Assembly (NCBI RefSeq): GCF_006345805.1
Contig: NC_043002.1
Span: 89,528,001-89,592,000 of the forward strand
Direction of reading: 5' to 3'
Length of the DNA stretch: 64,000 nucleotides
Source of the DNA: Octopus sinensis
Taxonomy: Eukaryota
The first letter of the stretch is position 1; every line of letters begins with the position of its first letter. The notes below the pieces were generated by a model, which did no database searches, was not told where the DNA came from, and saw only the letters and a list, made by a program, of their open reading frames with translations. Below are positions 1,070 to 29,165 of this stretch, piece after piece. The position numbers and the translations under genes were made by a program.

Positions 1070-1163
1070 ATGTCATTTTATAAAGAATACAAAGTCTGGA
1101 ACACACAACATAATGTTCAAAAGGAAGTGAAAGCAGAAAGTCTGGAAGATTTGCTCATTAAAG
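1070..1163 (+). CDS. DFFA: DFFA/ICAD-like gene, coding exon 1 (start of CIDE-N domain)
   Basis: Acceptor tttag|1048, ATG at 1070, translation MSFYKEYKVWNTQHNVQKEVKAESLEDLLIK, donor AAG|gtaaat at 1164 (phase 1). Resembles the CIDE-N start (F/Y-K-V-W...K-x-V-x-A-x-SL-x-D/E-L). Confidence 0.85.
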
Positions 1164-2333
1164 GTAAATTATGACTTTTTTTTTGAAGATAGGATTGTTA
1201 TTGAAATTTGTTAAAATCCAACTTAACTTCTAATTTATTTTGCTTCAAGTTAGCTCTGGCTGAACAGACTTGCAATCAAGTTTTCCATTGTTCTGATAAT
1301 TCTATCAATTTTGTAGTTATTTCTAATAGATTGAACAGCCACGGGGGGGGGGGGGGGTCTCTTGTTGATAAGTGACACTGACATCACAAATTGCACTCTT
1401 ATCTTGATATCTCTAAATCATATTTGAAAGTGATATTGCTGTATTGTCATTATAACTTGTACTAAGACCCTTAAATGATATACATATTTCTTAAAGGCTT
1501 GTTGACTATGTAGAAGGATGAGGTTTGATAAGGTAAGAAAGTAAGGATGTTTCCACAATTTGCTGAGGGATTAGTGGTCCATATTTTATCACTGACATTC
1601 AGTATTTGCAAATCAGAACTGCTTTACTGTATTGGACATTCCTTTAAAGTCTATTTAAAAAAGATCACATACAAATCATATATTTTACACGAATGTCATT
1701 AATCTTTTATCAAAACTCAAAGTTAATGAAAGAAAATTCTAGTTTGACATATTAATTGGACATCTTAGATCACATAGAAATTAACATTTAAAATGAATCT
1801 TTATCAGCTCTATACTGTCTGTTCTTGAAGAATATGAAACTTCTTGCACTGGGTTTGATATGTATGAATACCTATAATACTGGCAACAGCAGAAAATATT
1901 GCAGTTTTAAACAGTTACTGATCTTATGCAGTACTGCAACAAATAATTGTGTATGACACATGGCAGATGCAGGTGATGTCCATTTTCAGTCTTCCATGGT
2001 AAAGTATTACCTTACTAGGAAATATGTAAGAATTGGCAACAGGAAGGGCATCTGGCCATAGAAAATCTTTCAATAAATTTTGTCTGACCCATGCAAGCAT
2101 GGAAAAGTGGACATTAAATGGTGAGTGTGATGATGGCATACATATACACACACACATTTAGTTACTAATGCTAACCACTTACCTATAATTTCCTTTCTCT
2201 TACTGCTGTCCCATTATTTGTTTTTCGCTACTAGTTGACTATATATCATATTGATTTAACCTTCCTCTTATTTCTATTGTCTCACCTCCATCACCATCAA
2301 CTTTAGACTTAATCTGTTGGGGCCCACTTTAAA

Positions 2334-3028: not shown

Positions 3029-5035
3029 ACTAGTCTCAGAGACCCTAACAAAGGCCATGGCCACTGCCTTTCTTCCTCTGATTAAGCCATAAAAAAAAAC
3101 AAAAATACCCTTGCTTAAATCTTCCTTTCCAGAACAGTATTCCTTTCTCCTGGTATTTGTAACAAAAGCATTAACCATTATTAACTTCACAAAAAGCTGA
3201 GTATTTCCATTAACTCTGACAAACTGCTCAAGAGTAGATCTTATGGAACATTATGCATTTTTTAATATCTTGATTTTCGTGAAAATCTGGCATAATTTTA
3301 ATAGTAGCTGCCACTGTTGTTTTTCCATGCTTGCATAACTCTTTTCTATCTCATCACTTGTTGCAGTCCTTTGTCATCTTTATGAGAGACAAAGCATCAT
3401 TTTTCACCACTTTCTGTCTTCCTTCCACATACTTTTCGTTTGGATCACTTAATATTTCTTTACCCTGTAATCCTCCATACATATCTTTTACTTGTTTCAG
3501 TCATTAGACTGTGGCCATGTCGGGGCACCACCAGTAGTTTTTTTTACTTTACTTGATACTTACTTATTCTATTGGTTTCTTCTGCTGAACCACTCAGTTA
3601 CAAGAATGTAAACACAACACCACTAGTTGTCAAGCAGTGGTGAGGGACATACACTGATACAAGTCACACACATATATATGGGAAGCTTCTTTCAGTTTCC
3701 ATCTTCCAAATCCACCCACAAGGCTATAGTTGAAGGCACTTGACCAAGGTGCGATGCAGTGGGACTGAACCCAGAACCATGTGGTTGGGAAGCAAACTTA
3801 TTATACAGCCACGTTTGCACCTGTATCTTTTTTCTTGTGTATTACATCTAAGTCTTCTTATTTATGGTTTTTCTCCTTATCAATTTTTCATTTTTTTCTT
3901 GTTATTGATAATTCCTTAGTGTCTGTTAAGTTCCTTGTAGCCTATTAATGTATTTTTATAACATTTTCTAAAACATGTATATCTTGCTATTTGTAAATTA
4001 AAAATGTTGATTAAATTCTATTTCTATTTGGAATCTATGTGGGACAATATGCTAAATTTTTAGTATTATCTGTTACTCTAAATTTGATGTGATTTACCAG
4101 TTTACCATTTGAACGAATTAATTAGGTTCTGAGAGCAGGCTTTTCAGACAGGTGAGAATGCTGGGAATGATACACATTCTGAACACCTGTGGGGCAGGGA
4201 AAGAATGGAGAATATAGTTCAAATGTTTGTAGCAAAGTAAATTATACCTAAAGTATCCAAGGACCATGTAGTGGTATTCAAGTTGGCAGTGTGTTGACAA
4301 CCGACCATGAAATAATATGAAAGTGGAGCATGTTAGTGACCATTCATACAGGGTTATTAAAGTGGGCAGTGTGTTAAGTGCTTAACATATTGAATATCAT
4401 TGTGTAAAGGTGCATGTTCCTTCGGCTGCATAGAGGCCCTTTCCATTGGTTATTTTGTTTGCTGTTGTCTCTTTTAAACCGACCATATCAAGCTCAATTA
4501 TTGTACCTGTTTTATGTTCAGACAAGACAAATCTGGCTTCTCACACTTACCCTACAATGTCAATCTAAAAGTACACAGTCACAGCAAGATAATGAATGAT
4601 AAATGTAAAATGATGTGAATAAATAAGCTTTACAACTGACTGGGTGATCTGAATGCTTAAAGGGTAAAGGAAGAAAATATAATTTTCACTTCTGAAAGAG
4701 AAAGAATACATTATGTTTTGGTGCATTTTACCATTTGTTAACAAATAATATTTAACCCAATAGAGGCGGCGATCTGGCAGAGTTGTTAGCATGCTGGGCA
4801 AAACGCTTAGCAGCATTTCATCTGCCTTTTTATTGAGTTCAACTTCCAATGAGGTTCACTTTGCCTTTCATCCATTCAGCGTTGATAAAATAAGTACCAG
4901 TTGAACACAAGGGTCAACATAATCGACTTATACTCACCCCCAAATTACTGGTCTTGTGCTAAAATTTGAAACCAATATTTAACCCAATATTATATAAATT
5001 ATTAATAATATTACTTATTTTTTAAAAAATTCCAG

Positions 5036-5194
5036 CAAAAGCTGAATTTGGTATTGATTCTACAACGGAAGTAAAATTAGTTTTGGATGAAGATGGTACC
5101 GAAGTTGATGATGAAGACTACTTTCAATTTGTTTCTTCAGACACAACACTTCAAATTTTGTTATCATTTCAATCATGGTCACCAATCCATTTAT
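5036..5194 (+). CDS. DFFA: DFFA/ICAD-like gene, coding exon 2 (CIDE-N core)
   Basis: ttccag|5036, phase 1 matches exon 1; encodes AKAEFGIDSTTEVKLVLDEDGTEVDDEDYFQFVSSDTTLQILLSFQSWSPIHL with the CIDE-N signature LVLxEDGTEVDDExYF...W; donor T|gtgagt at 5195. Confidence 0.92.
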
Positions 5195-6449: not shown

Positions 6450-7260
6450 TTTCTGAGATGAGCTGCTGTTAACATGAGAATTTTTTTAACTGTTAATCTC
6501 ATCTTTAGAGTTGAACATTAAAAAACATATATACATGCACATTTCTCTTTCTAAATGTGTGTAACCATGCAACTCTTCCACAAGAACCTGCTCATCCCCT
6601 CCTTTTGTGCTTTAACTTTTGCCCCATCATAAAGCTGACTCACCCCCCGCTCCCTTGGAGCTTGTAGTCTCGTGAGTTTCATGATGACCTCAATAGTGCT
6701 TGTGGCATGAAAAAAAAGCACCCAGTACACTCTGTAAAGTGGTTGGCGTTAGCAAGGGTATTCAGCTGTAGAAACCATGCCAAAACAGACACTGGAGCAC
6801 AATGCAGTGCTTGGATCCTAACAAACCATCCAACCTATGCCAGCATGGAATGCAGATGATAATAAATGATTATGATGACTATTTTTCAGTTGATTTTTAC
6901 TGCAGATTGACATCAGACACTTTTACTTGATATTCTTTTCAATGCCTATTGTCATGATGACGATGAACAGATGAATTGAGTTGATTGAATTGCATGGAAT
7001 TTGCAGAAGAGGGAGACCCAGGAAAACAGGGGACAAAATAGTGAAGGCTTATCTCAAGATGCTGAATCTTATGGAGTGGATGACTGGTGATTTGCTATGC
7101 TTAAGAAGACCTCTCCATTACAACAGAAATGATATCCTAAAACTACTTAGGTTATGCTTCTGCTTGTAGGACCCTGTCCACCCCCCCCCCCATCTGCCCT
7201 GTTAGGCATTTTCCCACATTTCATCCCCTAACACCTCTCATTTCTCTATCTATAGTAATA

Positions 7261-8726: not shown

Positions 8727-9596
8727 TTATAATACTGTTGTAAAGTTCTTGAAAATCAGTTTAGTTGGTACATTGTCTCTTTTAATCTTACCGACTTCAT
8801 CATCTTCATAGGTATTGGCAGGAGTGGGAAAACCATCATCGAAAGGAAGTTGGTCTTCTTCTAAAAAGTCATTAAACTCTTCTTCAGTGTTAAGACAGAA
8901 ATTATGTAAGACACAGCAAGCCATTATCACATTTGGAATGAGTGCAGTGCGGGTCATTCCAACAAATTGTAGTCGACACCATCGACCTCGAAGCAGATTA
9001 AAAGCTTGTTGTGTAACCAGTCGAGTTTCAGTTAATCTTTTATTGTACTCTTGCTGATCTGGAACGAGGCAAGTTTCATCTAAGAAAGGGGTCAACAACC
9101 ATTTTTTCAGTGGATATGCTGCAGCCCCAAGCAAGTGTATGTCTTCTTTAATAAAGAAATTTGTTGGATTATTTTCTATTTCATGGAATATATCTGATTC
9201 ACACAAAACAACAGAATCATGGACAGAACCAGGCCAGCCAGTATAACAATCAGTAAACTTCATGTTGTGATCACAGATTGTCTGTAATACCATTGTATGA
9301 GTCTTTTTACGGTTGATGTATACTTCAGGGTGGTCTTTTGGGCTGAGAATTGATATGTGTGTAGTAGCCATGATACCAAGAACATTTGGAAATGCACTGA
9401 TGTTGTAGAAACCTTGAACAATGTCTTCAACCTCGGTTTGGTTTGGCCATTTGATAACAACTGTTTTCAGTTTGTTTAATCCTTTGATTATGCTGTCAAG
9501 AATAACTGATGCAGAAGATTCACAGACTTGAAATTGTTTTGCAATGTTACGTACTGATTCACCTTTGGCACCAAGAAACCGCAAACACATCAGCAC
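8727..9596 (-). CDS. Harbinger-transposase-derived (HARBI1/ALP1-like) gene, coding exon 2 (DDE_Tnp_4-like domain, catalytic triad substituted)
   Basis: Acceptor ttttaccattcag|GTG exactly at the start of the 289-codon ORF, phase 0; motifs FPNVLG..TH, YINRK, LQTICD, GWPGSVHD, YPLKKWLLTPF, AF.LLRGRW, ACCVLHN. Joined protein 413 aa with no stops or frameshifts. Confidence 0.9.
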   Translation of the reverse strand: MLMCLRFLGAKGESVRNIAKQFQVCESSASVILDSIIKGLNKLKTVVIKWPNQTEVEDIVQGFYNISAFPNVLGIMATTHISILSPKDHPEVYINRKKTHTMVLQTICDHNMKFTDCYTGWPGSVHDSVVLCESDIFHEIENNPTNFFIKEDIHLLGAAAYPLKKWLLTPFLDETCLVPDQQEYNKRLTETRLVTQQAFNLLRGRWCRLQFVGMTRTALIPNVIMACCVLHNFCLNTEEEFNDFLEEDQLPFDDGFPTPANTYEDDEVGKIKRDNVPTKLIFKNFTTVL

Positions 9597-12292
9597 CTGA
9601 ATGGTAAAATGTTTATAGCAAATAATAATCCAGAATGAAAGTAGGAAAATGTAGACTAAACATCAATATACAAAATGTGAAAGCTTGAGAAATCTGTAGT
9701 TTTTTTTTAAAGCATAGGTCAGATAGATTTTAATATTTCAACTATTCCTTAAGACAACAGCATACCTTTATCTCCTTAAATAATTAGTTTCATCTTTCAG
9801 TTCTTCTTAAGGCAAAACAGGTTTGTAAATTAAAGTATTTTAAAGATGTGTATTTGTGAAAATGAAGGTTCACAGTTTGTAAACCATTACCATTGTGCCC
9901 TCAGCAAAGAAAATCAACAATTGCTGGCTCAGAAATTCTAATTACAGCTCAGTGACATAAGTACTGAACAGTGTATTTGTGTTCTGAGTATTTTATTAAT
10001 TAACAGTGTTAAGTTTAAACCTTTCAGCTCTAAGAGCAAAGAAGGAGTGGATGTCATCAGTAGAATAACAGGGAGATGGTCTGTAGTATAAAGTGATACG
10101 GAGACAAGTCAAAAACTGTTTACATGTCCTTTTATAATGATATTGATAAAAAATATTACAAAAAACAAAGAATTAATTTTGCAACTAAAAATTTATGACC
10201 CCCATTTGATTATAGAAACACTGATTAGCTCTGTTAACCCTCTAGCATTTAAAGCAGCTATAATATATTCTCTAGCTACATTATGTTGAAACTGGCCAGA
10301 TCCAGCCTCTTGCATCTATCCTACAATGTTATTATAAAAGTAAACAGTCACATCATTGAAATCTCAAAGCTGTGAGATAATGCATGATGAATTCAAAGCA
10401 ATGTGAATAAATAAGCATTTCATTTGACAGAGTAATCTGAATGCTAAAGGGTTTATCTTCAAAATACCTGTCATCATCATCATCGTTTAACGTCCGCTTT
10501 CCATGCTGGCATGAGTTGGACGGTTTGACTGAGGACCGGTGAGCCAGAGGCTGCACCAGGCTCATGCATTTAATTTCAAAGGAAACAAAATGGGATGATA
10601 ATAATAATAATACAAAAACGATGGAAATTATTCCTTCCAATAGCTGAATGTGTCAACTGCCTTCGATATGCTAGTAAACCAATGTCTCAGTGCTGATTTT
10701 CCATTAGAACTGTGCAATTAATATGAAGAATGTTGTCCTCATCTATATATTCAATCATTATTATTAAGCAAATGTAAACCAAATTACAAAAGAATTTAGG
10801 GATAGCATTTGTTCTCTTGTACCAGTGCTGTAACTAACATTGTGGCATTTTATTTTGAGGCAAAGCAGGCTAGATAAGTTACTGATTAGTCCTTGGACAC
10901 TTTCAATATGCTATCTCCTCTCTATCTTTTCTACTGACACTATAATATCCTCTGATCCTCAGAGCTAGCTGGATTCATACTGTCTCACACAGGCATCCCA
11001 GAGCCATTAATTTCTGCTCCTTTTATCGCCCTTTTTGTGTACCAGCTTCAGACCCCATACTAATCACGTAATCCCAGTCCTTCTTTCTCCAAATGCTGTC
11101 CTCTGGACTGATGTTCAGAGAAGTCTAACTCTTGAATCTTTTCATGCATCATGTATCATTATTCACCTGTTCTTAGCTACTCTACTGTTTAAAATAGTCA
11201 GCGGCGAACACCAATTAGCAATAGTTTCTTGAGAATGTTTGATCACTTGTTTTTGAAAGACTTCAGTATGAGAGAGCAAGCGAGAAGGGATTTCCCCTCA
11301 AAGCGCTCAGTTTGAAGGAATTGGAAGGTCTGTCTTGTCCTGTTTTTCTCGTGTTGGATCAGCAAAGCTACTTTGTCAAAAATAATTTACATTTAAAAAA
11401 TGGCTACATAGACTGTGTGCCACGGGCTAACTTCTTCCTTTCAATAATTAACCTGTAATCCTAACTGAAAACAAACAAGTAAAGCATTAACATTATACTT
11501 CTACAAGTTACACAGAAAGAACAAAACCAAGATAGATAGGTTTGTTTCGCAATCTAACAGAAATAACCCGTAATAAAATATTTTCTTTAAACGTTTTAAA
11601 GATTCGAGATGTATTAAGATCATTTTTCGGACGATGAATCTCCTCAAAATATTTAATTAACCTATGAGTTTGCTGCCTTTAGGTTTTGTTGACGAAAAAT
11701 TAAAGGAGCATCTAATTTTTAATATTAAAAATATTTGTTACATTGGGATGACGAGTTTTGTGGTGTTGTCTTCGTATACACTCAACAGACGACGAATAAC
11801 TTTTATGTTGTTCTCCGTTAAGTCAGCCAGGATTTGAGGGAGACTTAGCTGCTATTTCCTTAGAGACTGTCGTTGTAGAGTTGAACATCAGTTTATTATT
11901 CTACATTTTACTGAATGAAGCAGCAGAGAAATAATTGTCAAAATACCAAAATTATAACTAACACCATGAAATTATGTATGAAGTCTATTTCCTTACGTGA
12001 TTTTTGCCATTTTAATTTTCCATGCTAAAATACGAAAGTACTTAAGACAGTATATAGTGGTATATATTCAAATTAACGAGGTTGGTTCAGTAAATTTTTA
12101 CGCCGTTGGTTCTACGTAGTCACTCGATTTGCTAGAAATAGCAATCAAATCTTCTGTAAATCACACACATTGCAGTTTTAAGAAATATAAAATAAAAGGA
12201 AGCACATGTTAAAATAACGTCCTAGATATACTTATATCACAGATGTTGGTAGTAAATACATTGTTTATTTAATGTTATTATTGTATGTTTAC

Positions 12293-12664
12293 CTTCCTGT
12301 CCAACGGAACTGGTTTCCTGCCTCGGGTTTGATTCTCTCTCAGGATATGCGGCGATAGGTTTGAACATAGTATTTCGAATGTTTCCGGATCCATTCGAAA
12401 ATGTTGACGGAATTGGTTGTCCCTAAAATTAAATAACACATCTCTTTCGCTTGAACCTCGTGCTTGAGCTTTGCTTTGTTTGTTAGATGTTGCCGCCGAT
12501 TCACCTTTCCTCGCTAACGTCGCCAGCAACGAGGTCGCCATATTATTATCCCTGTTGCCAGACAAGCTATTTTTTCTGAGAGGATAACAATCATCCATTA
12601 GAAACAGATCGCATGCTGCATACAAAGTAGCTAGAAAAGCCGTATCTTCCTGAGAAACTTCCAT
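12293..12664 (-). CDS. Harbinger-transposase-derived (HARBI1/ALP1-like) gene, coding exon 1
   Basis: ATG at 12664; 124 codons including the Harbinger N-terminal motif FRQHFRMDPETFEILC; ends RKPVPLDRK with donor AAG|gtaaac (intron starts 12292, phase 0). Confidence 0.85.
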
Positions 12665-12909: not shown

Positions 12910-13445
12910 GGATCTTTTCGGTTTGAACGGCAGTTTTTTAAGATAATTTCCACGTAACTAAACACTTTTAAACTTCGTATACTGGTAGAATGTGTTTATA
13001 AAACATCTTTTTCTCTTGACTTTATTGTGAAAATTCTATAGTTTGTAAGATATTTGTTGGTTTTTTTTCTTCAATTTCTGCAATTTCAACCAATCAATGA
13101 CGTCTATTGAGGTGAAAACATTGTGCCGTATGAAAATGTCCCTAAAAAAAGGGCGATGCTTCGGTATAGGTACACACGTGACTTTGTTTACATTTCTGAA
13201 GATAACAGAAACCCTTTTCTCCCACTCCTAACCCTAACCCCCCATATATAAAAAAAACACTTTCTTGAAATGTATCCGGTACTTCCGGTACATATACCGA
13301 AGTTACGCCAAAAAAGATACCCTTTCCCCACCCCTAACCCTAACCCAGATTGAAATGCAATAGATCGATACTAGGGTCATAATTATGGGTGACAATTTCA
13401 TATGACACCGCTAGAGAAAAACTGCCGTTCAAACCGAAAAGATCC
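12910..13445. mobile_element. MITE with 29-bp perfect TIRs, 8-bp near-TSD and internal (TAACCC)n bits
   Basis: TIR ggatcttttcggtttgaacggcagttttt at both ends; flanks cgtcatcg (12902-12909) and tgtcatcg (13446-13453). Confidence 0.8.
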
Positions 13446-19015: not shown

Positions 19016-21044
19016 GTGAATAGAGTAGCCTCCCTTTATTAAATAATCTCCCTTAGTTGTTGGTTGTGTTGGAAACGACGTTACCTTTTCAGATTCAATA
19101 ATTTAAACTCTCTCTTATGTAGTACAAATCTATTTTATTTACAGCTCTCAAATGTTTTATTTTTGTATTTTTCACTTTTTTCAGAACTTTTAGCTAATTT
19201 TGTTTGAAATTGAAAGTAAATTTGGCAAAAAAAAAAAAAAAGTCATTAACATCATTTTCCCTTCCATATTTTAAAAAGGTCATAGGCCAACAGGTTTTGG
19301 GATCTGAAGATAAACTGTAAAGTTAAACCCTTTATGGACGAGAAACCCAGGGTAACCCCATGAACCCGCCTTCACCAGGAAAAAAATGTATGTATGTATG
19401 TATGTATATATGTATGTGTGTCTGTGTGTGCGTGTGCGTGCGTGCATGCCTGCCTATATCAGACATGCTGGACATCAACACCTCCCCTTTTACCATATTT
19501 GAACTAGCAGCAGCCACCAAGCAACTAAAAGCCTCGAAAGCATTTGGTCCCGACAACATCCCAGCTATAATTTGGAAGGATGATAGATTTCGCACACTTT
19601 TGCTCAACCTCTGCAACCACACACTTTCCACCTTTGTTGCTCCAAAGATTTGGCACTAATCTCAAATCACCCCAATACCCCAAAAAGGCGATTTGTCTCT
19701 CATCACCAACTACAGGGGTATATCTCTAATGTCAATTGCTGCAAAACTGTACAACCAACTGATCCTAAATCGTCTTGTCCTTTTTGTTGAACCTCTGCTC
19801 CGAAAGAACCAAAATGGATTCAGACATCGGCGCTCAACGCTGAGCCAGATACTATGCCTACGCAGACTTATTGAAAAATTAAAAGCATTTAATCGCGATC
19901 TTGCAATGGTATTTGTAGACTTTTCTAAAGCGTTCGATTCTGTAGATAGGTACAAGATGTTTGAAATCCTTAAGCTCTATGGGATACCAGACAAAATCAT
20001 TTCTGCCATCAAGGTCCTTTACACAGACACGTCTTCAACTATCTTAACCCCTGATGGAGAAATATCATCTCCCTCAATCAAAGCCGGAATACTGCAGGGA
20101 GACACACTCGCCCCATTTCTTTTCATCATTGTTGTTGATTATGTGCTACGTATGTCAGTTGATACCATCTCTGGCAAGGGCTTTGAAATAAAACCAAGAA
20201 GAAGTTCCAGACACCCAGCTGAGTACTTGACAGACACTGACTTTGCTGACGACATCGCTCTTATCAGTGATTCTCTCTCCAATGCCCAGTCTCTTTTACA
20301 ATCTCTTGAACAAGCCTCAAATTGTGTAGGTCTTTACCTCAATGAGGCCAAAACTGAATACATAAACAAGTGCCTGTCCAACAGTGATTGCATCATCCAT
20401 ACTCTCAACAATGCACCCTTAAATATGGTTTCTGATTACAAATATCTTGGGTCACACATATCATCATCTGGAAAAGACTTTCTAACTAGAAAGGGTATGG
20501 CCTGGGCAGCCTGTAATGACATGCATAAGATCTGGTCATCAAATCTAAGTAGAGACTTCAAACTTGAAATCTTCAAAGCCACAGTCGAACCAATTCTACT
20601 ATATGGCTCAGAAACCTGGATGTTATCAAAGAAGCTTGAGAGGCGGTAGGATGGAACTTACACTCGCCTCCTTATGAGAGCTCAAAATCTCTCATGGAAG
20701 CGTCATCCAACCAAAGTACAAATATATGGGAAACTACCACATGTGTCATCTCTTGTGAAAGATAGAAGAGTCCAGTTTGCTGGACATTGTTGTAGAGCTG
20801 AAAAAGAAGTAATTTCTACTCTTCTCCTCTAGAAGCCATCTACTTGCGATACCAGAGGGTGCACACTCTCCTACCCTGATGTAATCTCCAGGGATACAGG
20901 CATCCAGCAACGGGACCTCCGTAATGCCATGATGGACCGTGAAGTCTGGCGTAGCATGGTAAATTCCATTGTTTCGACCACGGTCGAACAATGATGATGG
21001 TGATGATGTATGTATGTATGTATGTATGTATGTATGTATGTATG

Positions 21045-24457: not shown

Positions 24458-25080
24458 AGCATCCTGCAAATGCTGCAAAACATTGCACTAGTATTCCTTG
24501 TTTACTGTCTGACCAAGTGGAGCATACTCATGATGAACAATGCCCTTGTAGTCAAAGAAAATGGTCAACAGTGTCTTCACATTGCTTTGACTCATTTGTG
24601 CTTTCTTGGTCTCGGAGATGTTGGGGTCTTCCCCTGGGAAGACTGAGCCTTTGTTTCAAGGTCATAGCCATAGACCCATGATTCATCATCCGTTATAGCC
24701 GTCTTCAAAAAGTTTTCATCATTCTCAACACAATCAAGGAGATCTTGTGCAACTGAAACCTGAGTGTCTCTTTTTGGTCAGCTGAAAACAGTTTTGGCTC
24801 AAACTTGGCAGACATGCGTCTCATACCCAAATCTTCAGGGATAATGAACTGAACTGAACTGTAACTAATCTGCACATCCTCTAATAACTCACAGATGGTG
24901 ATACAATAATTTCCCCTCACAACAGCATGCACATCTGCAATGTTTTTCTCAGTTCTGCTGGTTGCAGGTCTCCCAGAATGTTCGTCACGAATGGCATTTT
25001 TCAGCCATCTTTGAAACATCTGAACCACTCATACATTTGTGTGTGTCACATACACTCCTCTCCATACACTTTCTGCAATT
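24458..25080 (-). mobile_element. Degenerate mariner transposase fragment
   Basis: ORF 24705-25028 (SGRPATSRT...ITICEL...DLGMRRMSAKFEPKL) continues in another frame into ITDDESWVYGYDLETK, the mariner first-D motif region. Confidence 0.8.
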
Positions 25081-27437: not shown

Positions 27438-29165
27438 TTGGGTTGAGGTATAATTCATGAGCGTTTTTCAAAAATTTATTTTAAACAAAACAACTACTCC
27501 CCAAAAAACAGAACTCACAAATCTTTGAATAAAACTGTTTGAATAAAGCAATGCAGAGGGATAGATCGAGATGAATAGCGGTTCCAGCAAAATGGGGCTA
27601 CCCATCAAGCATCAAATGACTCCCTAGCCTGGCTGTGAGACTGATTTCGGGAGAGACTGGTCAGCAGGAAGTGTGATGTTGAGTGGGCACTGCTTTCACC
27701 GGACTTGAACCCCCCACCAGATTTTTATCTGTTGGGGTTATCTCAAGGATAATGTTTACCAGAACAACCCCAAAATGATTGGTGAACTGAAGGCAGTAAT
27801 CACAACAGAAATCAGGGAAATTCCCAGAGAGGAATGTGTTCGAGAAATTGACAATTTTGTGTGACATCTGCAAGTGTTTGTGCAATGTATGCCATTTGGA
27901 GTATATTTTGAAAAGAACATGACTTTCATGCAAAGGTAATGATTGCACACAGACTGAAGTTTAAGTCCAGCAAATTTCTTGAAATTTGCTGGACCTTTGT
28001 AGGATTTAATAGAATTTTTATGGGTTCTGGTTTTTTTTGGGGTCACCCTGTACAACAAATTAATTAATAATATACTCTCCATTGTTGTTTGTGACTTCGT
28101 TCGATTATTCAATAAGCTTGTCAATGCCTCGGTGATAGAAATTTCCCAGTCTTGAGTCAAAGAATTTGTCCAACCAAGCCCTCAATTCCATGTCATTATT
28201 GAATGATACACCATGCAAAGCATTTGAAAGTGGTTGAAAGAGATGAAAATCTGATTGTGCCAAGACAGGAGAGTATGGAGGATGAGGCAGCACTTCCCAT
28301 TCGAGTTCTTGATTCGCGGCTTTAACGACGGGCGTTGTCGTGTTGCAGAAAAATGCCATTTCGCTGATTCGATCTTTTTTGCTGAATTGCTTCGTTGAGT
28401 CAGAGCAGTTGTTGAAGGTAGAGCTCCGAGGATGAAGGTCTTGTTTTGCTCGTGGAGTCACTTGTTTGTCGGGGCTGAGCCATTCTTTTAGCTGCTTCAT
28501 TTTGATGTAAAGGTACCATTTTTCATCACCAGTGACAATGCTGTAAAGAAAACGTTTGTGACCATGCGATGTCAAGGAGCAAGCTGGTAGCGATTGTCGA
28601 GCATTGATTTTTGTTGTTTTTGCTCTAAGTGTGTGACACCCAAGTGCCAAGTTTCTGAACCTTGCCTATTGAATGAAGGTGGTTCACTACAGTTTTTTTA
28701 TTACAATCCATCTGCTCCACTAATTCTCTGGTTGTTTGACATGGATTTTCATGAAGTTGATTCAATTGCTCTTCATCAAACTCAATTAGCCAACCGGTGT
28801 GTGATCTGTCATTGAGGTCAAAATACCCATTTTTGAAGTGTAAAAACCAATGATGGGTGGTACTTTAAGGCATTAATCCTTCTCCATACACAGCACAAAC
28901 CTCATAAGCAACTTTGGCAGTCTTAACACCTTGATTAAAGACAAAAAGCAAATGGTGTCGAAAATGCTCAGTTTTATCTACTTGACATTCCAGTTTAGTG
29001 ATCTGAAAATTCACAAAATCCAATAAAATTAAAAAATCAAAGCACACTATGTTGTAGAGCAAAGAATTCTCTTTCAAATAACATAAAACATTTTGCCAAT
29101 GCATTTTATTTCTGCGTGCATTTTTAAATTTGAAATAAATGCTCATTAATTATTCCTCAACCCAA
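27438..29165 (-). mobile_element. Mariner (DD34D-type) element with TIRs and TA flanks, frameshifted
   Basis: TIR ttgggttgagg(t/a)ataatt(c/a)atgagc at both ends with TA outside; ORFs 28865-29146 (HFRHHLLFVFNQG) and 28105-28650 (IVTGDEKW...VLPHPPYSPVLAQSDFHLF). Confidence 0.85.
27580..28052 (+). mobile_element. 3' half of a second Tc1/mariner-superfamily element nested in the mariner
   Basis: Reads RFQQNGATHQ...EWALLSPDLNPP-DFYLLGYLKDNVY; ends ggtcaccctgta (CAGGGTG-type TIR plus TA). Confidence 0.7.

What the first reader, a model, noticed from the sequence alone, without database searches (positions are those of the whole stretch)
8727..12664. Intact, intron-containing Harbinger-derived gene with all three DDE catalytic residues replaced
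Seen: the spliced 413-aa ORF is unbroken and keeps the Harbinger scaffold motifs, but G-A-I-D-G-T-H reads G-I-M-A-T-T-H (codon 9366-9368), L-G-D-x-x-Y reads L-G-A-A-A-Y (9123-9125), and R-x-x-I-E-x-x-F reads R-L-V-T-Q-Q-A-F (9009-9011). It has a 2.7-kb intron and no TIRs are visible. Known: Arabidopsis ALP1 (PRC2 antagonist) and HDP1 (IDM histone acetyltransferase complex) are domesticated Harbinger transposases working as chromatin cofactors; vertebrate HARBI1 is a separate domestication. Inference: a catalytically dead domesticated transposase under purifying selection, possibly an uncharacterised cephalopod/mollusc chromatin regulator.
Basis: partly seen in the sequence, partly recalled or inferred. 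Interest (0 to 1): 0.82.

Follow-up and report, generated by a model that had tools for sequence, protein, structure and literature searches.

The report
Dead Harbinger transposase gene kept by cephalopods
This octopus gene began as a jumping-gene enzyme (Harbinger transposase), lost all three catalytic residues, and has been conserved in octopuses, argonauts and cuttlefish; this is a solid but unsurprising new case of a host taking over a transposon protein, and its function is untested.

Summary
On the minus strand, exon 1 (12664-12293), a GT-AG intron of 2,696 nt and exon 2 (9596-8727) give a 413-aa protein. It is identical to RefSeq XP_029637761.1, "protein ALP1-like", of Octopus sinensis. 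Pfam DDE_Tnp_4 matches at E = 1.6e-29.

The triad positions read A201, A282 and Q320. The same A-A/V-Q pattern is in all seven coleoid sequences examined: O. bimaculoides, Argonauta hians, Acanthosepion pharaonis and other decapodiforms. Of 226 relatives, 174 keep D-D-E.

- **Selection:** ML dN/dS is 0.088, and neutrality is rejected (lnL -5233 vs -5739).
- **Orthology:** the intron position is conserved. In both Octopus species and Argonauta the gene lies antisense in an intron of a CIDE-N gene.
- **Expression:** spliced transcripts exist in cuttlefish.
- **Transposon hallmarks:** no TIRs, no second copy and no Myb-like ORF in the window.

So this is a coleoid-wide domesticated PIF/Harbinger transposase, duplicated in decapodiforms.

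Caveats:
- The window copy has a 16-nt deletion that frameshifts the last 7 conserved residues.
- Independence from vertebrate HARBI1 is favoured but not formally shown (AU p = 0.44).
- A chromatin role is only an analogy.

It is a new member of a known kind, of moderate interest.

The parts
12293..12664 (-). Exon 1 (codons 1-124). It holds a variable N-terminus with the conserved motif L..ACD.FLMDD, and the start of the helical (HTH-like) region.
   Evidence: ATG at 12664 and donor AAG|GT at 12293/12292. 95.2% identical to O. bimaculoides. Conservation pattern.
9597..12292 (-). Intron, 2,696 nt, GT-AG, phase 0, between K124 and V125.
   Evidence: The same position is used in O. bimaculoides, Argonauta, A. 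pharaonis (L016) and a decapodiform genomic contig (L008, GC-AG, about 8.2 kb). It has 29 indel events against O. bimaculoides, versus 0 in the exons apart from the 3' deletion. It contains a SINE-like repeat at 10470-10527.
8727..9596 (-). Exon 2 (codons 125-413 plus stop): the rest of the HTH-like region and the whole DDE_Tnp_4 (RNase H-like) domain.
   Evidence: ORF. 98.4% identical to O. bimaculoides, against 94.0% for the intron.
8901..9365 (-). DDE_Tnp_4 domain match (residues 202-356).
   Evidence: Pfam PF13359, E = 1.6e-29, 103 bits, profile positions 3-158 of 158. AlphaFold2 pLDDT is above 90 across this core.
9366..9368 (-). Codon GCT = A201, at the position of the first catalytic Asp.
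   Evidence: It is A in all 7 coleoid sequences.
9123..9125 (-). Codon GCT = A282, at the position of the second catalytic Asp.
   Evidence: It is A in six coleoid sequences and V in P0004.
9009..9011 (-). Codon CAA = Q320, at the position of the catalytic Glu.
   Evidence: It is Q in all 7 coleoid sequences.
8727..8772 (-). Site of a 16-nt deletion relative to O. bimaculoides (junction 8772/8771), followed by the frameshifted tail PTKLIFKNFTTVL and the stop codon.
   Evidence: The lost peptide belongs to a C-terminal helix (residues 391-406) modelled at pLDDT about 97.
1070..1168 (+). First coding exon of the host gene, which encodes a CIDE-N domain protein. The Harbinger-derived gene lies antisense in one of this gene's introns.
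   Evidence: Translation MSFYKEYKVWNT.... It is conserved in O. bimaculoides and Argonauta. The overlapping gene is annotated with PF02017 CIDE-N in L001, L002 and L009.
5035..5178 (+). Second CIDE-N-coding exon of the host gene. The splice sites were not determined exactly.
   Evidence: Translation ...VKLVLDEDGTEVDDEDYFQF...; tblastn matches in L001 and L002.

Best explanation
This is the Octopus sinensis ortholog of a coleoid-cephalopod host gene that arose by domestication of a PIF/Harbinger transposase.

Shown:
- The protein keeps the transposase's helical N-terminal region and its RNase H-like DDE_Tnp_4 core.
- All three metal-binding acidic residues are replaced by A, A/V and Q in every coleoid ortholog examined.
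- The gene sits at a fixed locus with a conserved intron position and evolves under strong purifying selection.
- It is transcribed and spliced in cuttlefish, and it was duplicated within decapodiforms.

Inferred:
- With no carboxylates left to hold Mg2+, it cannot cut or join DNA.
- What selection preserves is therefore the fold's binding surfaces.
- The protein most likely works as a non-catalytic nuclear adaptor. It would bind DNA or chromatin proteins through the conserved HTH-like region and the dead core, probably with a Myb/SANT-type DNA-binding partner encoded elsewhere. This is how HARBI1-NAIF1, ALP1-ALP2 and HDP1-HDP2 work.

My confidence is about 0.9 for 'domesticated, catalytically dead, functional host gene' and about 0.4-0.5 for the adaptor-with-partner mechanism. 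The O. sinensis allele in the window also carries a small C-terminal frameshift whose reality and effect are unknown.
For: - **Family:** DDE_Tnp_4 at E = 1.6e-29.
- **Triad:** A/A(V)/Q in 7 of 7 coleoid sequences, against D-D-E in 174 of 226 relatives. No other sequence shares the A-A/V-Q pattern.
- **Selection:** NG86 dN/dS is 0.06-0.15 in all unsaturated pairs. ML omega is 0.088, with lnL -5233.1 against -5739.3 when omega is fixed at 1. Exon 2 is 98.4% identical to O. bimaculoides and the intron 94.0%. The intron has 29 indels and the exons one.
- **Orthology:** the coleoid clade has 100/100 support. It has a long stem (0.99) and very short internal branches. The phase-0 intron position is the same in Octopus, Argonauta, Acanthosepion and L008. 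The gene is nested antisense in a CIDE-N gene in three octopodiform genomes.
- **Isolation:** an exhaustive scan of 1.84 billion representatives drops from 85% and 68% identity to 40% or less.
- **Expression:** Logan contigs L017 and L018 match the A. pharaonis locus at 99.8-99.9% in two blocks that skip exactly the intron.
- **No transposon hallmarks:** no TIRs, one copy in the window and no Myb/MADF-like ORF in the window. The Mytilus relative, in contrast, is multi-copy with a Myb_DNA-bind_4 gene 3-4 kb away.
- **Fold kept:** the AlphaFold2 model has pLDDT 85.5 and pTM 0.80, with the core above 90.
- **Constraint pattern:** 63-65% of residues are invariant across coleoids in the HTH-like region and the core, against 16-19% in the N-terminal and linker regions.
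- **Literature:** mutating a single DDE residue of the rice Harbinger element PING drastically reduces transposition, and ALP1 (DGA in place of DDE) works non-catalytically in PRC2 (PMC4671723). Co-domestication with Myb/MADF partners is frequent (PMC9710019).
Against: - No function, localisation or partner is shown.
- A search seeded with the Mytilus Harbinger Myb-like protein found no cephalopod relative. No Myb-like ORF lies in the window or within 10 kb of the gene in the other genomes.
- No Octopus transcript was recovered; expression is shown only in Acanthosepion and close relatives.
- The window's copy has a frameshifted C-terminus that disrupts a confidently modelled terminal helix. 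This particular allele could be impaired, or the assembly could be wrong.
- The CIDE-N nesting was not seen within 10 kb in Acanthosepion or L008, so synteny across the octopodiform-decapodiform split rests on the intron position and the phylogeny only.
Confidence: 0.6

Rival explanations
1. It is a transposon-taming factor. In this view a dead transposase is kept because it represses related active Harbinger elements. It could form inactive heteromers with their transposases, sequester their Myb-like protein, or occupy their ends, much as truncated or inactive transposase derivatives do in other systems.
For: The conserved core and HTH-like region are the parts needed for oligomerisation and for partner or DNA contact. 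D-D-E-intact Harbinger transposases are abundant in molluscs. Retention of two paralogs in decapodiforms would fit tracking of different element families.
Against: The protein is 40% identical or less to any intact Harbinger transposase found, which makes heteromerisation with current elements doubtful. The very slow, uniform evolution across the whole coleoid clade (omega 0.088) is unlike the arms-race pattern expected of a repressor. No intact Harbinger element was seen in the window.
Confidence: 0.15
2. The O. sinensis copy in this window is on its way to becoming a pseudogene. Its 16-nt 3' deletion and a new MITE in its upstream region would be the first lesions, even though the gene is functional in other cephalopods.
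For: The frameshift removes the last 7 residues, which are conserved in the six other coleoid sequences and belong to a high-confidence terminal helix. A 536-bp MITE lies 246 bp upstream of the ATG and is absent from O. bimaculoides. No Octopus transcript was found in the collections.
Against: Polarised by outgroups, the O. sinensis lineage has 8 synonymous and only 3 non-synonymous changes, all at variable sites. There is no other indel or stop. R397, nearly invariant among Harbinger relatives, and the first half of the helix are kept. The deletion sits in an AT-rich stretch flanked by a GTA microhomology and could be an assembly error.
Confidence: 0.12
3. It is still an enzyme. In this view the scaffold has been re-tooled for a different activity or uses other residues for catalysis. 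An example would be the conserved E314, six residues before Q320.
For: The former active-site region is extremely conserved (GIMATTH, HLLGA, ETRxxxQ). This shows selection on that surface. E314 is invariant in coleoids.
Against: Both aspartate positions are Ala or Val, so there are no carboxylates for two-metal chemistry. No acidic residue lies within the three motifs. Mutating even one triad residue drastically reduces PING transposition (PMC4671723).
Confidence: 0.04
4. It is an ordinary decaying transposon copy, or an annotation artefact, with no host function.
For: NCBI names it only by similarity ('ALP1-like'). It lies inside another gene's intron, as transposon insertions often do.
Against: - omega is 0.088, with 2*delta-lnL of about 1,000 against neutrality.
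- Complete ORFs (the window's only with the 3' frameshift) are found in seven sequences from both coleoid superorders.
- The intron position is conserved, and spliced mRNA exists.
- There are no TIRs.
Confidence: 0.01

Closest known systems
Arabidopsis ALP1 (with ALP2), a PRC2 accessory subunit derived from a PIF/Harbinger transposase
   Same: It is a Harbinger transposase-derived host gene with a DDE_Tnp_4 core and a degraded triad. It has a single conserved intron near the 5' end and is conserved over a large clade (PMC4671723). NCBI's automatic name for the octopus protein is 'ALP1-like'.
   Different: - ALP1 has D-G-A (two of three residues lost); the cephalopod protein has lost all three (A-A-Q).
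- Identity to plant ALP1-like proteins is only about 24%.
- The plant clade sits on its own 2.3-unit stem far from the coleoid clade in the ML tree.
- No PRC2 link or ALP2-like partner is known here. It is an analogue, not an ortholog.
Vertebrate HARBI1 (with NAIF1)
   Same: It is an animal host gene derived from a Harbinger transposase. It is single-copy and conserved across a large clade. Like HARBI1, whose cellular role is still uncharacterised (PMC9710019), this gene has no known function.
   Different: - The three vertebrate HARBI1 sequences examined keep D-D-E.
- Identity is 24-29%, against 34-40% to intact invertebrate Harbinger transposases.
- The ML tree places HARBI1 (100/100) outside the group that holds the coleoid clade (86/92).
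- Intron positions differ.
- The AU test does not reject a joint clade (p = 0.44), so independence is probable, not proven.
Insect PIF-like domesticated genes (Drosophila DPLG1-7; APLG, LPLG and the two cockroach domestications)
   Same: These are recurrent, lineage-restricted domestications of PIF/Harbinger transposases. They are recognised by the same criteria: synteny, dN/dS far below 1 (for example 0.037-0.038 for LPLG1 and LPLG2) and no TIRs or TSDs. Some have an adjacent MADF partner and some do not (PMC9710019).
   Different: This one is in a different phylum and is an independent event. No adjacent MADF/Myb gene was found here. The cephalopod case is duplicated in decapodiforms.
Active PIF/Harbinger elements of molluscs (for example the Mytilus edulis 'HARBI1-like' P0010 element)
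   Same: The domain architecture is the same, and these are the highest-scoring non-cephalopod relatives (34-40% identity).
   Different: The Mytilus element keeps D-D-E. It occurs at two loci on one Mytilus chromosome and has a Myb_DNA-bind_4 gene 3-4 kb away. Its intron is at a different position.

Membership tests
PIF/Harbinger transposase superfamily (origin) | DDE_Tnp_4 / Plant_tran catalytic-core domain | tested here: met
   PF13359 at E = 1.6e-29 (103 bits, cut-off 24.8) and PF04827 at E = 7e-8. 14,247 homologs at E <= 0.001.
PIF/Harbinger transposase superfamily (origin) | N-terminal helix-turn-helix region upstream of the core | tested here: inconclusive
   The model predicts helices 82-191 at pLDDT above 90. 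The region aligns with that of relatives. Only a faint precomputed DUF8040 hit exists, and HTH_Tnp_4 is not detected.
Active (autonomous) Harbinger element | Intact D-D-E catalytic triad | tested here: not met
   A201, A282 and Q320 occupy the triad positions.
Active (autonomous) Harbinger element | Terminal inverted repeats with 3-bp target-site duplication flanking the gene | tested here: not met
   No inverted-repeat pair brackets 8727-12664. The only long pairs are a SINE-like repeat and an unrelated MITE.
Active (autonomous) Harbinger element | Second ORF encoding a Myb/SANT/MADF-like DNA-binding protein in the same element | tested here: not met
   None among the ORFs of 95 aa or more in the window, and none called within 10 kb in L001, L002 or L016. 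The Mytilus element has one. Short or spliced ORFs could have been missed.
Active (autonomous) Harbinger element | Multiple dispersed copies per genome | tested here: inconclusive
   One copy in the 64-kb window. Exact-product look-ups found one genomic place each for O. sinensis, O. bimaculoides, Argonauta and A. pharaonis. Those look-ups cannot see diverged copies, and whole genomes could not be scanned with these tools.
Domesticated transposase (host gene) | Orthologs at a conserved locus or with conserved gene structure across species | tested here: met
   The gene has the same antisense position in a CIDE-N gene intron in three octopodiform genomes. The phase-0 intron position is the same in five genomic loci (window, L001, L002, L016 and L008). 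The CIDE-N nesting was not seen in decapodiform loci within 10 kb.
Domesticated transposase (host gene) | Purifying selection (dN/dS far below 1) | tested here: met
   omega = 0.088 by ML, with lnL -5233 against -5739 for omega = 1. Pairwise values are 0.06-0.15.
Domesticated transposase (host gene) | Transcribed and correctly spliced | tested here: met
   Met for A. pharaonis: L017 and L018 are spliced copies of L016. Intron-less contigs from several other runs carry P0003, P0004 and P0005. Not tested for Octopus, because no transcript is in the collections.
Domesticated transposase (host gene) | Demonstrated cellular function | not testable with these tools
   This needs genetics or biochemistry.
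Vertebrate HARBI1 orthology group | Forms one clade with vertebrate HARBI1 | tested here: inconclusive
   The ML tree puts HARBI1 outside a group (86/92) that holds the coleoid clade. The AU test does not reject a joint clade (delta-lnL 4.1, p = 0.44).
Vertebrate HARBI1 orthology group | Retains D-D-E and shares gene structure | tested here: not met
   The HARBI1 sequences P0060, P0070 and P0080 have D-D-E and the coleoid gene has A-A-Q. Catfish HARBI1 has no intron at the coleoid position; its first intron follows residue 287.
Plant ALP1 / HDP1 groups | Clade membership with plant ALP1-like proteins; association with PRC2 or the IDM complex | tested here: inconclusive
   The plant ALP1-like pair sits on a separate 2.3-unit stem, and identity is about 24%. 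An AU test on the poorly optimised quick tree was uninformative (p = 0.65). Complex association is not testable here.

The most novel reading that the evidence does not exclude
A Harbinger transposase was captured once in the coleoid stem lineage, which by general knowledge is more than about 250 My old. It was stripped of all catalytic residues, kept almost unchanged since, and duplicated in squid and cuttlefish. In this reading it is a coleoid-specific subunit of a chromatin or transcription complex, acting with an as yet unidentified DNA-binding partner. That would make it one of the few lineage-defining, transposon-derived regulators behind cephalopod innovations.

A more speculative variant concerns its conserved nesting inside a CIDE-N gene, a domain family linked to the DNA fragmentation factor. 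Together with the apoptosis-related partner of HARBI1 (NAIF1), this could point to a role in apoptotic chromatin handling.
Probability: 0.2. Interest if true: 0.7.

Novelty: new member of a known kind. Interest (0 to 1): 0.45.

Why it matters
Domestication of PIF/Harbinger transposases is known from plants (ALP1, HDP1), vertebrates (HARBI1) and insects. I found no description of a molluscan or cephalopod case in the searchable literature. The gene exists only as an automatically named RefSeq model.

This case is unusually clean:
- All three catalytic residues are gone.
- omega is about 0.09.
- The gene is conserved across both coleoid superorders and duplicated in one of them.

It therefore offers a well-defined candidate for a lineage-specific regulatory protein, in animals where gene editing is becoming possible. 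It is also a further data point on whether dead Harbinger cores are repeatedly reused as protein-interaction modules. It does not change any general principle.

Tried and rejected
- **Third exon.** I looked for a short third exon encoding the conserved C-terminus MIYISTN. There is none. The difference is a 16-nt deletion in the window.
- **Solved structures.** The PDB sequence search gave only noise, with E above 0.6. The Foldseek search of the AlphaFold2 model gave nothing at E <= 0.001; the best hits were Metnase, Mos1 and Tn5 transposases at E = 6e-3 to 0.5. This is consistent with an RNase H-like transposase fold, but no close solved structure exists, so the triad could not be checked by superposition.
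- **Myb-like partner.** A search seeded with the Mytilus Harbinger Myb_DNA-bind_4 protein returned only Mytilus-like proteins.
- **Independent evidence for the 16-nt deletion and Octopus expression.** An exact look-up of the exon-2 ORF found nothing. A homolog search with the last 156 residues also found nothing.
- **Species of the sequencing runs.** Run accessions were not found in any paper. Taxon assignment of P0004, P0005 and L008 to Decapodiformes therefore rests on the tree and on cluster mates of A. pharaonis.
- **Older, mollusc-wide origin.** Haliotis 'ALP1-like' (D-D-Q) is intronless, in a different host gene and about 29% identical. Two Logan proteins with dead triads (P0144, P0101) are weak sisters (87/81), with long branches and unknown source. 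There is no evidence of orthology, and the question is left open.
- **Tree quality.** The 'quick' tree was poorly optimised; constrained trees scored higher. I redid it with the careful search.
- **CIDE-N nesting in decapodiforms.** It was not found within 10 kb.

Full report
**1. What is in the sequence**

On the minus strand an ATG at 12664 opens a 372-nt exon that ends at 12293 (AAG|GTAAAC). After 2,696 nt, an acceptor (TTCAG|GTG) at 9597/9596 opens an 870-nt exon that ends with TAA at 8727. The spliced product is 413 aa.

The product is identical to XP_029637761.1, 'protein ALP1-like', of Octopus sinensis. The window maps to chromosome CM016864.1 of GCA_006345805.1, where NCBI's gene model spans exactly these 3,938 nt.

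**2. Is it a Harbinger transposase, and are the triad positions right?**

Pfam DDE_Tnp_4 matches residues 202-356 at E = 1.6e-29, and Plant_tran matches at 7e-8.

The register is clear. In the D-D-E-bearing Mytilus relative P0010, profile position 2 is the first catalytic Asp (D179). In the octopus protein the local match starts at profile position 3 = T202, so A201 occupies the Asp position.

Two alignments place A201, A282 and Q320 on the D, D and E of G-A-I-D-G-T-H, L-L-G-D-x-x-Y and R-x-V-I-E-x-x-F. One has 19 relatives. The other has 226 sequences, drawn from an exhaustive HMMER scan of 1.84 billion representatives. Of the 226, 174 carry D-D-E. Only the seven coleoid sequences carry A-A/V-Q. 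No acidic residue lies within the three motifs. The nearest conserved one, E314, is six residues upstream of Q320.

An AlphaFold2 model of the O. bimaculoides ortholog is confident: mean pLDDT 85.5, pTM 0.80, core above 90. The PDB holds no close structure. The best Foldseek hits are Metnase, Mos1 and Tn5 at E >= 6e-3. The triad could therefore not be cross-checked by superposition.

**3. Orthologs and age**

Homolog searches return a tight group followed by a sharp gap.

| Sequence | Source | Identity to the window protein |
|---|---|---|
| P0001 | O. bimaculoides LOC106873678 | 98% |
| P0002 | Argonauta hians | 85% |
| P0003, P0004, P0005, P0006 | decapodiform proteins | 59-68% |
| all others | various | 40% or less |

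P0003's 90% cluster contains CAE1322978.1 of the cuttlefish Acanthosepion pharaonis.

A careful ML tree gives the seven coleoid sequences 100/100 support. The clade has a long stem (0.99 substitutions per site) and very short internal branches. It splits into an octopodiform and a decapodiform subclade.

The phase-0 intron between ...LDRK and VLMCL... is at the same place in five genomic loci:
- O. sinensis
- O. bimaculoides
- Argonauta
- A. pharaonis (L016)
- an unnamed decapodiform contig (L008; GC-AG donor, about 8.2 kb)

In both Octopus species and in Argonauta the gene lies antisense inside an intron of a small CIDE-N-domain gene. That gene's first two coding exons are at about 1070-1168 and about 5035-5178 (+) in the window. 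This nesting was not seen within 10 kb in the two decapodiform loci.

The gene therefore predates the octopodiform-decapodiform split. By general knowledge that split is on the order of 250 My old or more; I did not date it here.

**4. Selection**

- Pairwise Nei-Gojobori dN/dS is 0.148 (O. sinensis vs O. bimaculoides; dS 0.077), 0.059 (vs Argonauta; dS 1.37), 0.064 (P0003 vs P0004) and 0.105 (P0005 vs L008). Deeper pairs are saturated at synonymous sites.
- A Goldman-Yang codon model on 7 sequences by 384 codons gives omega = 0.088. The lnL is -5233.1, against -5739.3 with omega fixed at 1.
- Between the two Octopus species, exon 2 is 98.4% identical and the intron 94.0%. The intron has 29 indel events and the coding exons have one.
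- Across coleoids, 63-65% of residues are invariant in the HTH-like region (126-190) and in the core (191-365). Only 16-19% are invariant in the N-terminal 75 residues and in the acidic linker.

**5. Expression**

Logan contigs L017 (SRR6517992) and L018 (ERR4031017) match the A. pharaonis genomic locus at 99.8-99.9%. They match in two blocks that skip exactly L016 10397-12853, so they are spliced mRNAs. Further intron-less contigs from other runs carry P0003, P0004 and P0005. No Octopus transcript was found in the collections.

**6. Transposon hallmarks are absent**

- No inverted repeat brackets the gene.
- There is one copy in the window.
- No Myb/MADF-like ORF occurs among the window's ORFs, or within 10 kb in the other genomes.

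The Mytilus relative P0010 is the contrast. It occurs at two loci on one Mytilus chromosome and has a Myb_DNA-bind_4 gene 3-4 kb away.

**7. The C-terminal frameshift**

Compared with O. bimaculoides, the window lacks 16 nt (ATGATATATATTAGTA, flanked by a GTA microhomology) just before the stop codon. The frame shifts, and the last seven residues (MIYISTN in O. bimaculoides; equivalent in the other five coleoid sequences) are replaced by PTKLIFKNFTTVL.

These residues form the second half of a C-terminal helix (391-406) modelled at pLDDT about 97. Otherwise the O. sinensis lineage shows no relaxation. It has 8 synonymous and 3 non-synonymous changes, the latter all at variable sites.

I could not tell whether the deletion is real or an assembly error.

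**8. Relation to known domestications**

The ML tree places vertebrate HARBI1 (100/100; D-D-E intact) outside a group (86/92) that contains the coleoid clade and many D-D-E-intact invertebrate transposases. It places plant ALP1-like proteins on a separate long stem.

Identity to HARBI1 is 24-29%, against 34-40% to invertebrate transposases. Intron positions differ from catfish HARBI1 and from the Mytilus element.

The backbone is poorly resolved. An AU test does not reject a coleoid+HARBI1 clade (delta-lnL 4.1, p = 0.44). An earlier quick tree was simply under-optimised. Independent domestication is thus the better-supported reading. The taxonomic distribution also fits it: a shared origin would need losses in the many intervening animal lineages. 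It is still not formally proven.

From the literature:
- ALP1 has D-G-A and acts non-catalytically with PRC2.
- A single triad mutation drastically reduces PING transposition (PMC4671723).
- Harbinger domestications recur in insects, often with a MADF partner.
- HARBI1 needs NAIF1 for nuclear localisation (PMC9710019).

I found no paper describing a cephalopod Harbinger domestication.

**9. Duplication in decapodiforms**

The decapodiform sequences fall into two types:
- Type A: P0003, P0252, P0004 and P0254.
- Type B: P0005, P0006 and L008.

The two types are 72% identical over the full-length proteins (78-82% over exon 2). Run ERR4031017 yields transcripts of both (L006 and L018). P0254 and P0006 are both recorded on an ENA contig of 195,241 nt. 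That is probably the same contig, but I could not verify it.

Both types keep the dead triad and evolve at omega of about 0.1. The two types together form the decapodiform clade (99/98), so the duplication followed the split from octopodiforms.

**10. Mechanism**

Shown: the fold and the HTH-like region are conserved, the catalytic carboxylates are gone, and selection is strong.

Inferred: the protein has no nuclease or transposase activity, and selection acts on binding surfaces. The most likely role is a nuclear adaptor acting with a DNA-binding partner, by analogy with HARBI1-NAIF1, ALP1-ALP2 and HDP1-HDP2. A search seeded with a Mytilus Harbinger Myb protein found no cephalopod partner, so this step remains an inference.

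Rivals, each detailed in its own section of this report:
- a transposon-repressing decoy;
- incipient pseudogenisation of the O. sinensis allele;
- residual or new enzymatic activity;
- a plain decaying transposon copy, which the tests above refute.

**11. Verdict**

This is a new, clean, coleoid-wide member of the known class of domesticated PIF/Harbinger transposases. It is already present in RefSeq as an uncharacterised 'ALP1-like' model. Interest is moderate.

Noticed in passing
window 12910-13445: A 536-bp MITE with perfect 29-nt terminal inverted repeats and an 8-bp target-site duplication (CGTCATCG/TGTCATCG). The 8-bp duplication would fit a hAT-type element (from memory, not tested). 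It lies 246 bp upstream of the gene's ATG. O. bimaculoides has the empty site, so it inserted in the O. sinensis lineage, possibly into the gene's promoter region.
   Followed up: yes
window 1070-1168, about 5035-5178 and further exons up to about 19300 (+): The host gene encodes a small (193 aa) CIDE-N-domain protein, and the Harbinger-derived gene lies antisense in one of its introns. The arrangement is conserved in O. bimaculoides and Argonauta hians. It was not seen within 10 kb in cuttlefish.
   Followed up: partly
L006, L018 (run ERR4031017); L008 and L016; proteins P0254 and P0006: Decapodiform cephalopods have two paralogs of the gene. They are 72% identical over the full-length proteins (78-82% over exon 2), and both have the dead triad. 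Both are transcribed in one sequencing run, and both are apparently on one 195-kb contig.
   Followed up: partly
L010 10001-11203 (Haliotis asinina); P0110 and P0251: Abalone has an intronless 'ALP1-like' Harbinger-derived gene with a D-D-Q triad. It is conserved between two Haliotis species and nested antisense in an unrelated 906-aa gene. It may be a separate domestication. It is about 29% identical to the cephalopod gene.
   Followed up: partly
P0144 and P0101 (Logan contigs, source organism unknown): These two Harbinger-like proteins have all three triad residues replaced (S-S-R and S-Y-D). They are weak sisters (87/81) of the coleoid clade. They may be further domestications or pseudogenes.
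   Followed up: no
P0058, P0035 (fish 'ALP1-like' proteins): Teleost Harbinger-derived proteins have degraded triads (G-D-G and G-D-D). They form a clade distinct from HARBI1 in the tree, which suggests further vertebrate domestications.
   Followed up: no
window 19693-20649 (+): A 318-aa ORF with a reverse-transcriptase domain (RVT_1, E = 4.7e-29). It is a fragment of a non-LTR retrotransposon just beyond the CIDE-N gene.
   Followed up: partly
window 6822-6879, 10470-10527 and many sites between 36 kb and 63.5 kb: A highly repeated SINE-like element (core ...CATGCCAGCATGGAAAGCGGACGTTAAACGATGATGATGA...) occurs in both orientations, including inside the gene's intron. Repeat-derived ORFs span 52.1-53.6 kb. 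Long TG/CA-type microsatellite runs lie at about 57.9-58.9 kb.
   Followed up: no
window 28105-28650 and 24705-25028 (-): These ORFs look by eye like remnants of a mariner-type transposase (...PYSPVLAQSDFHLF...). Pfam gave no hit at E <= 0.01.
   Followed up: partly
L008 about 1784: The decapodiform ortholog uses a GC-AG intron (AAG|GCAAGT) at the conserved intron position. The octopus and cuttlefish genes use GT-AG there.
   Followed up: no
L011-L014 (Mytilus): The closest named mollusc relative ('putative nuclease HARBI1' of Mytilus edulis) is a typical two-gene Harbinger element. It has an identical 378-aa product at two loci on one chromosome and a Myb_DNA-bind_4 gene 3-4 kb downstream on the other strand. 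The RefSeq name 'HARBI1' therefore labels a transposon here.
   Followed up: partly
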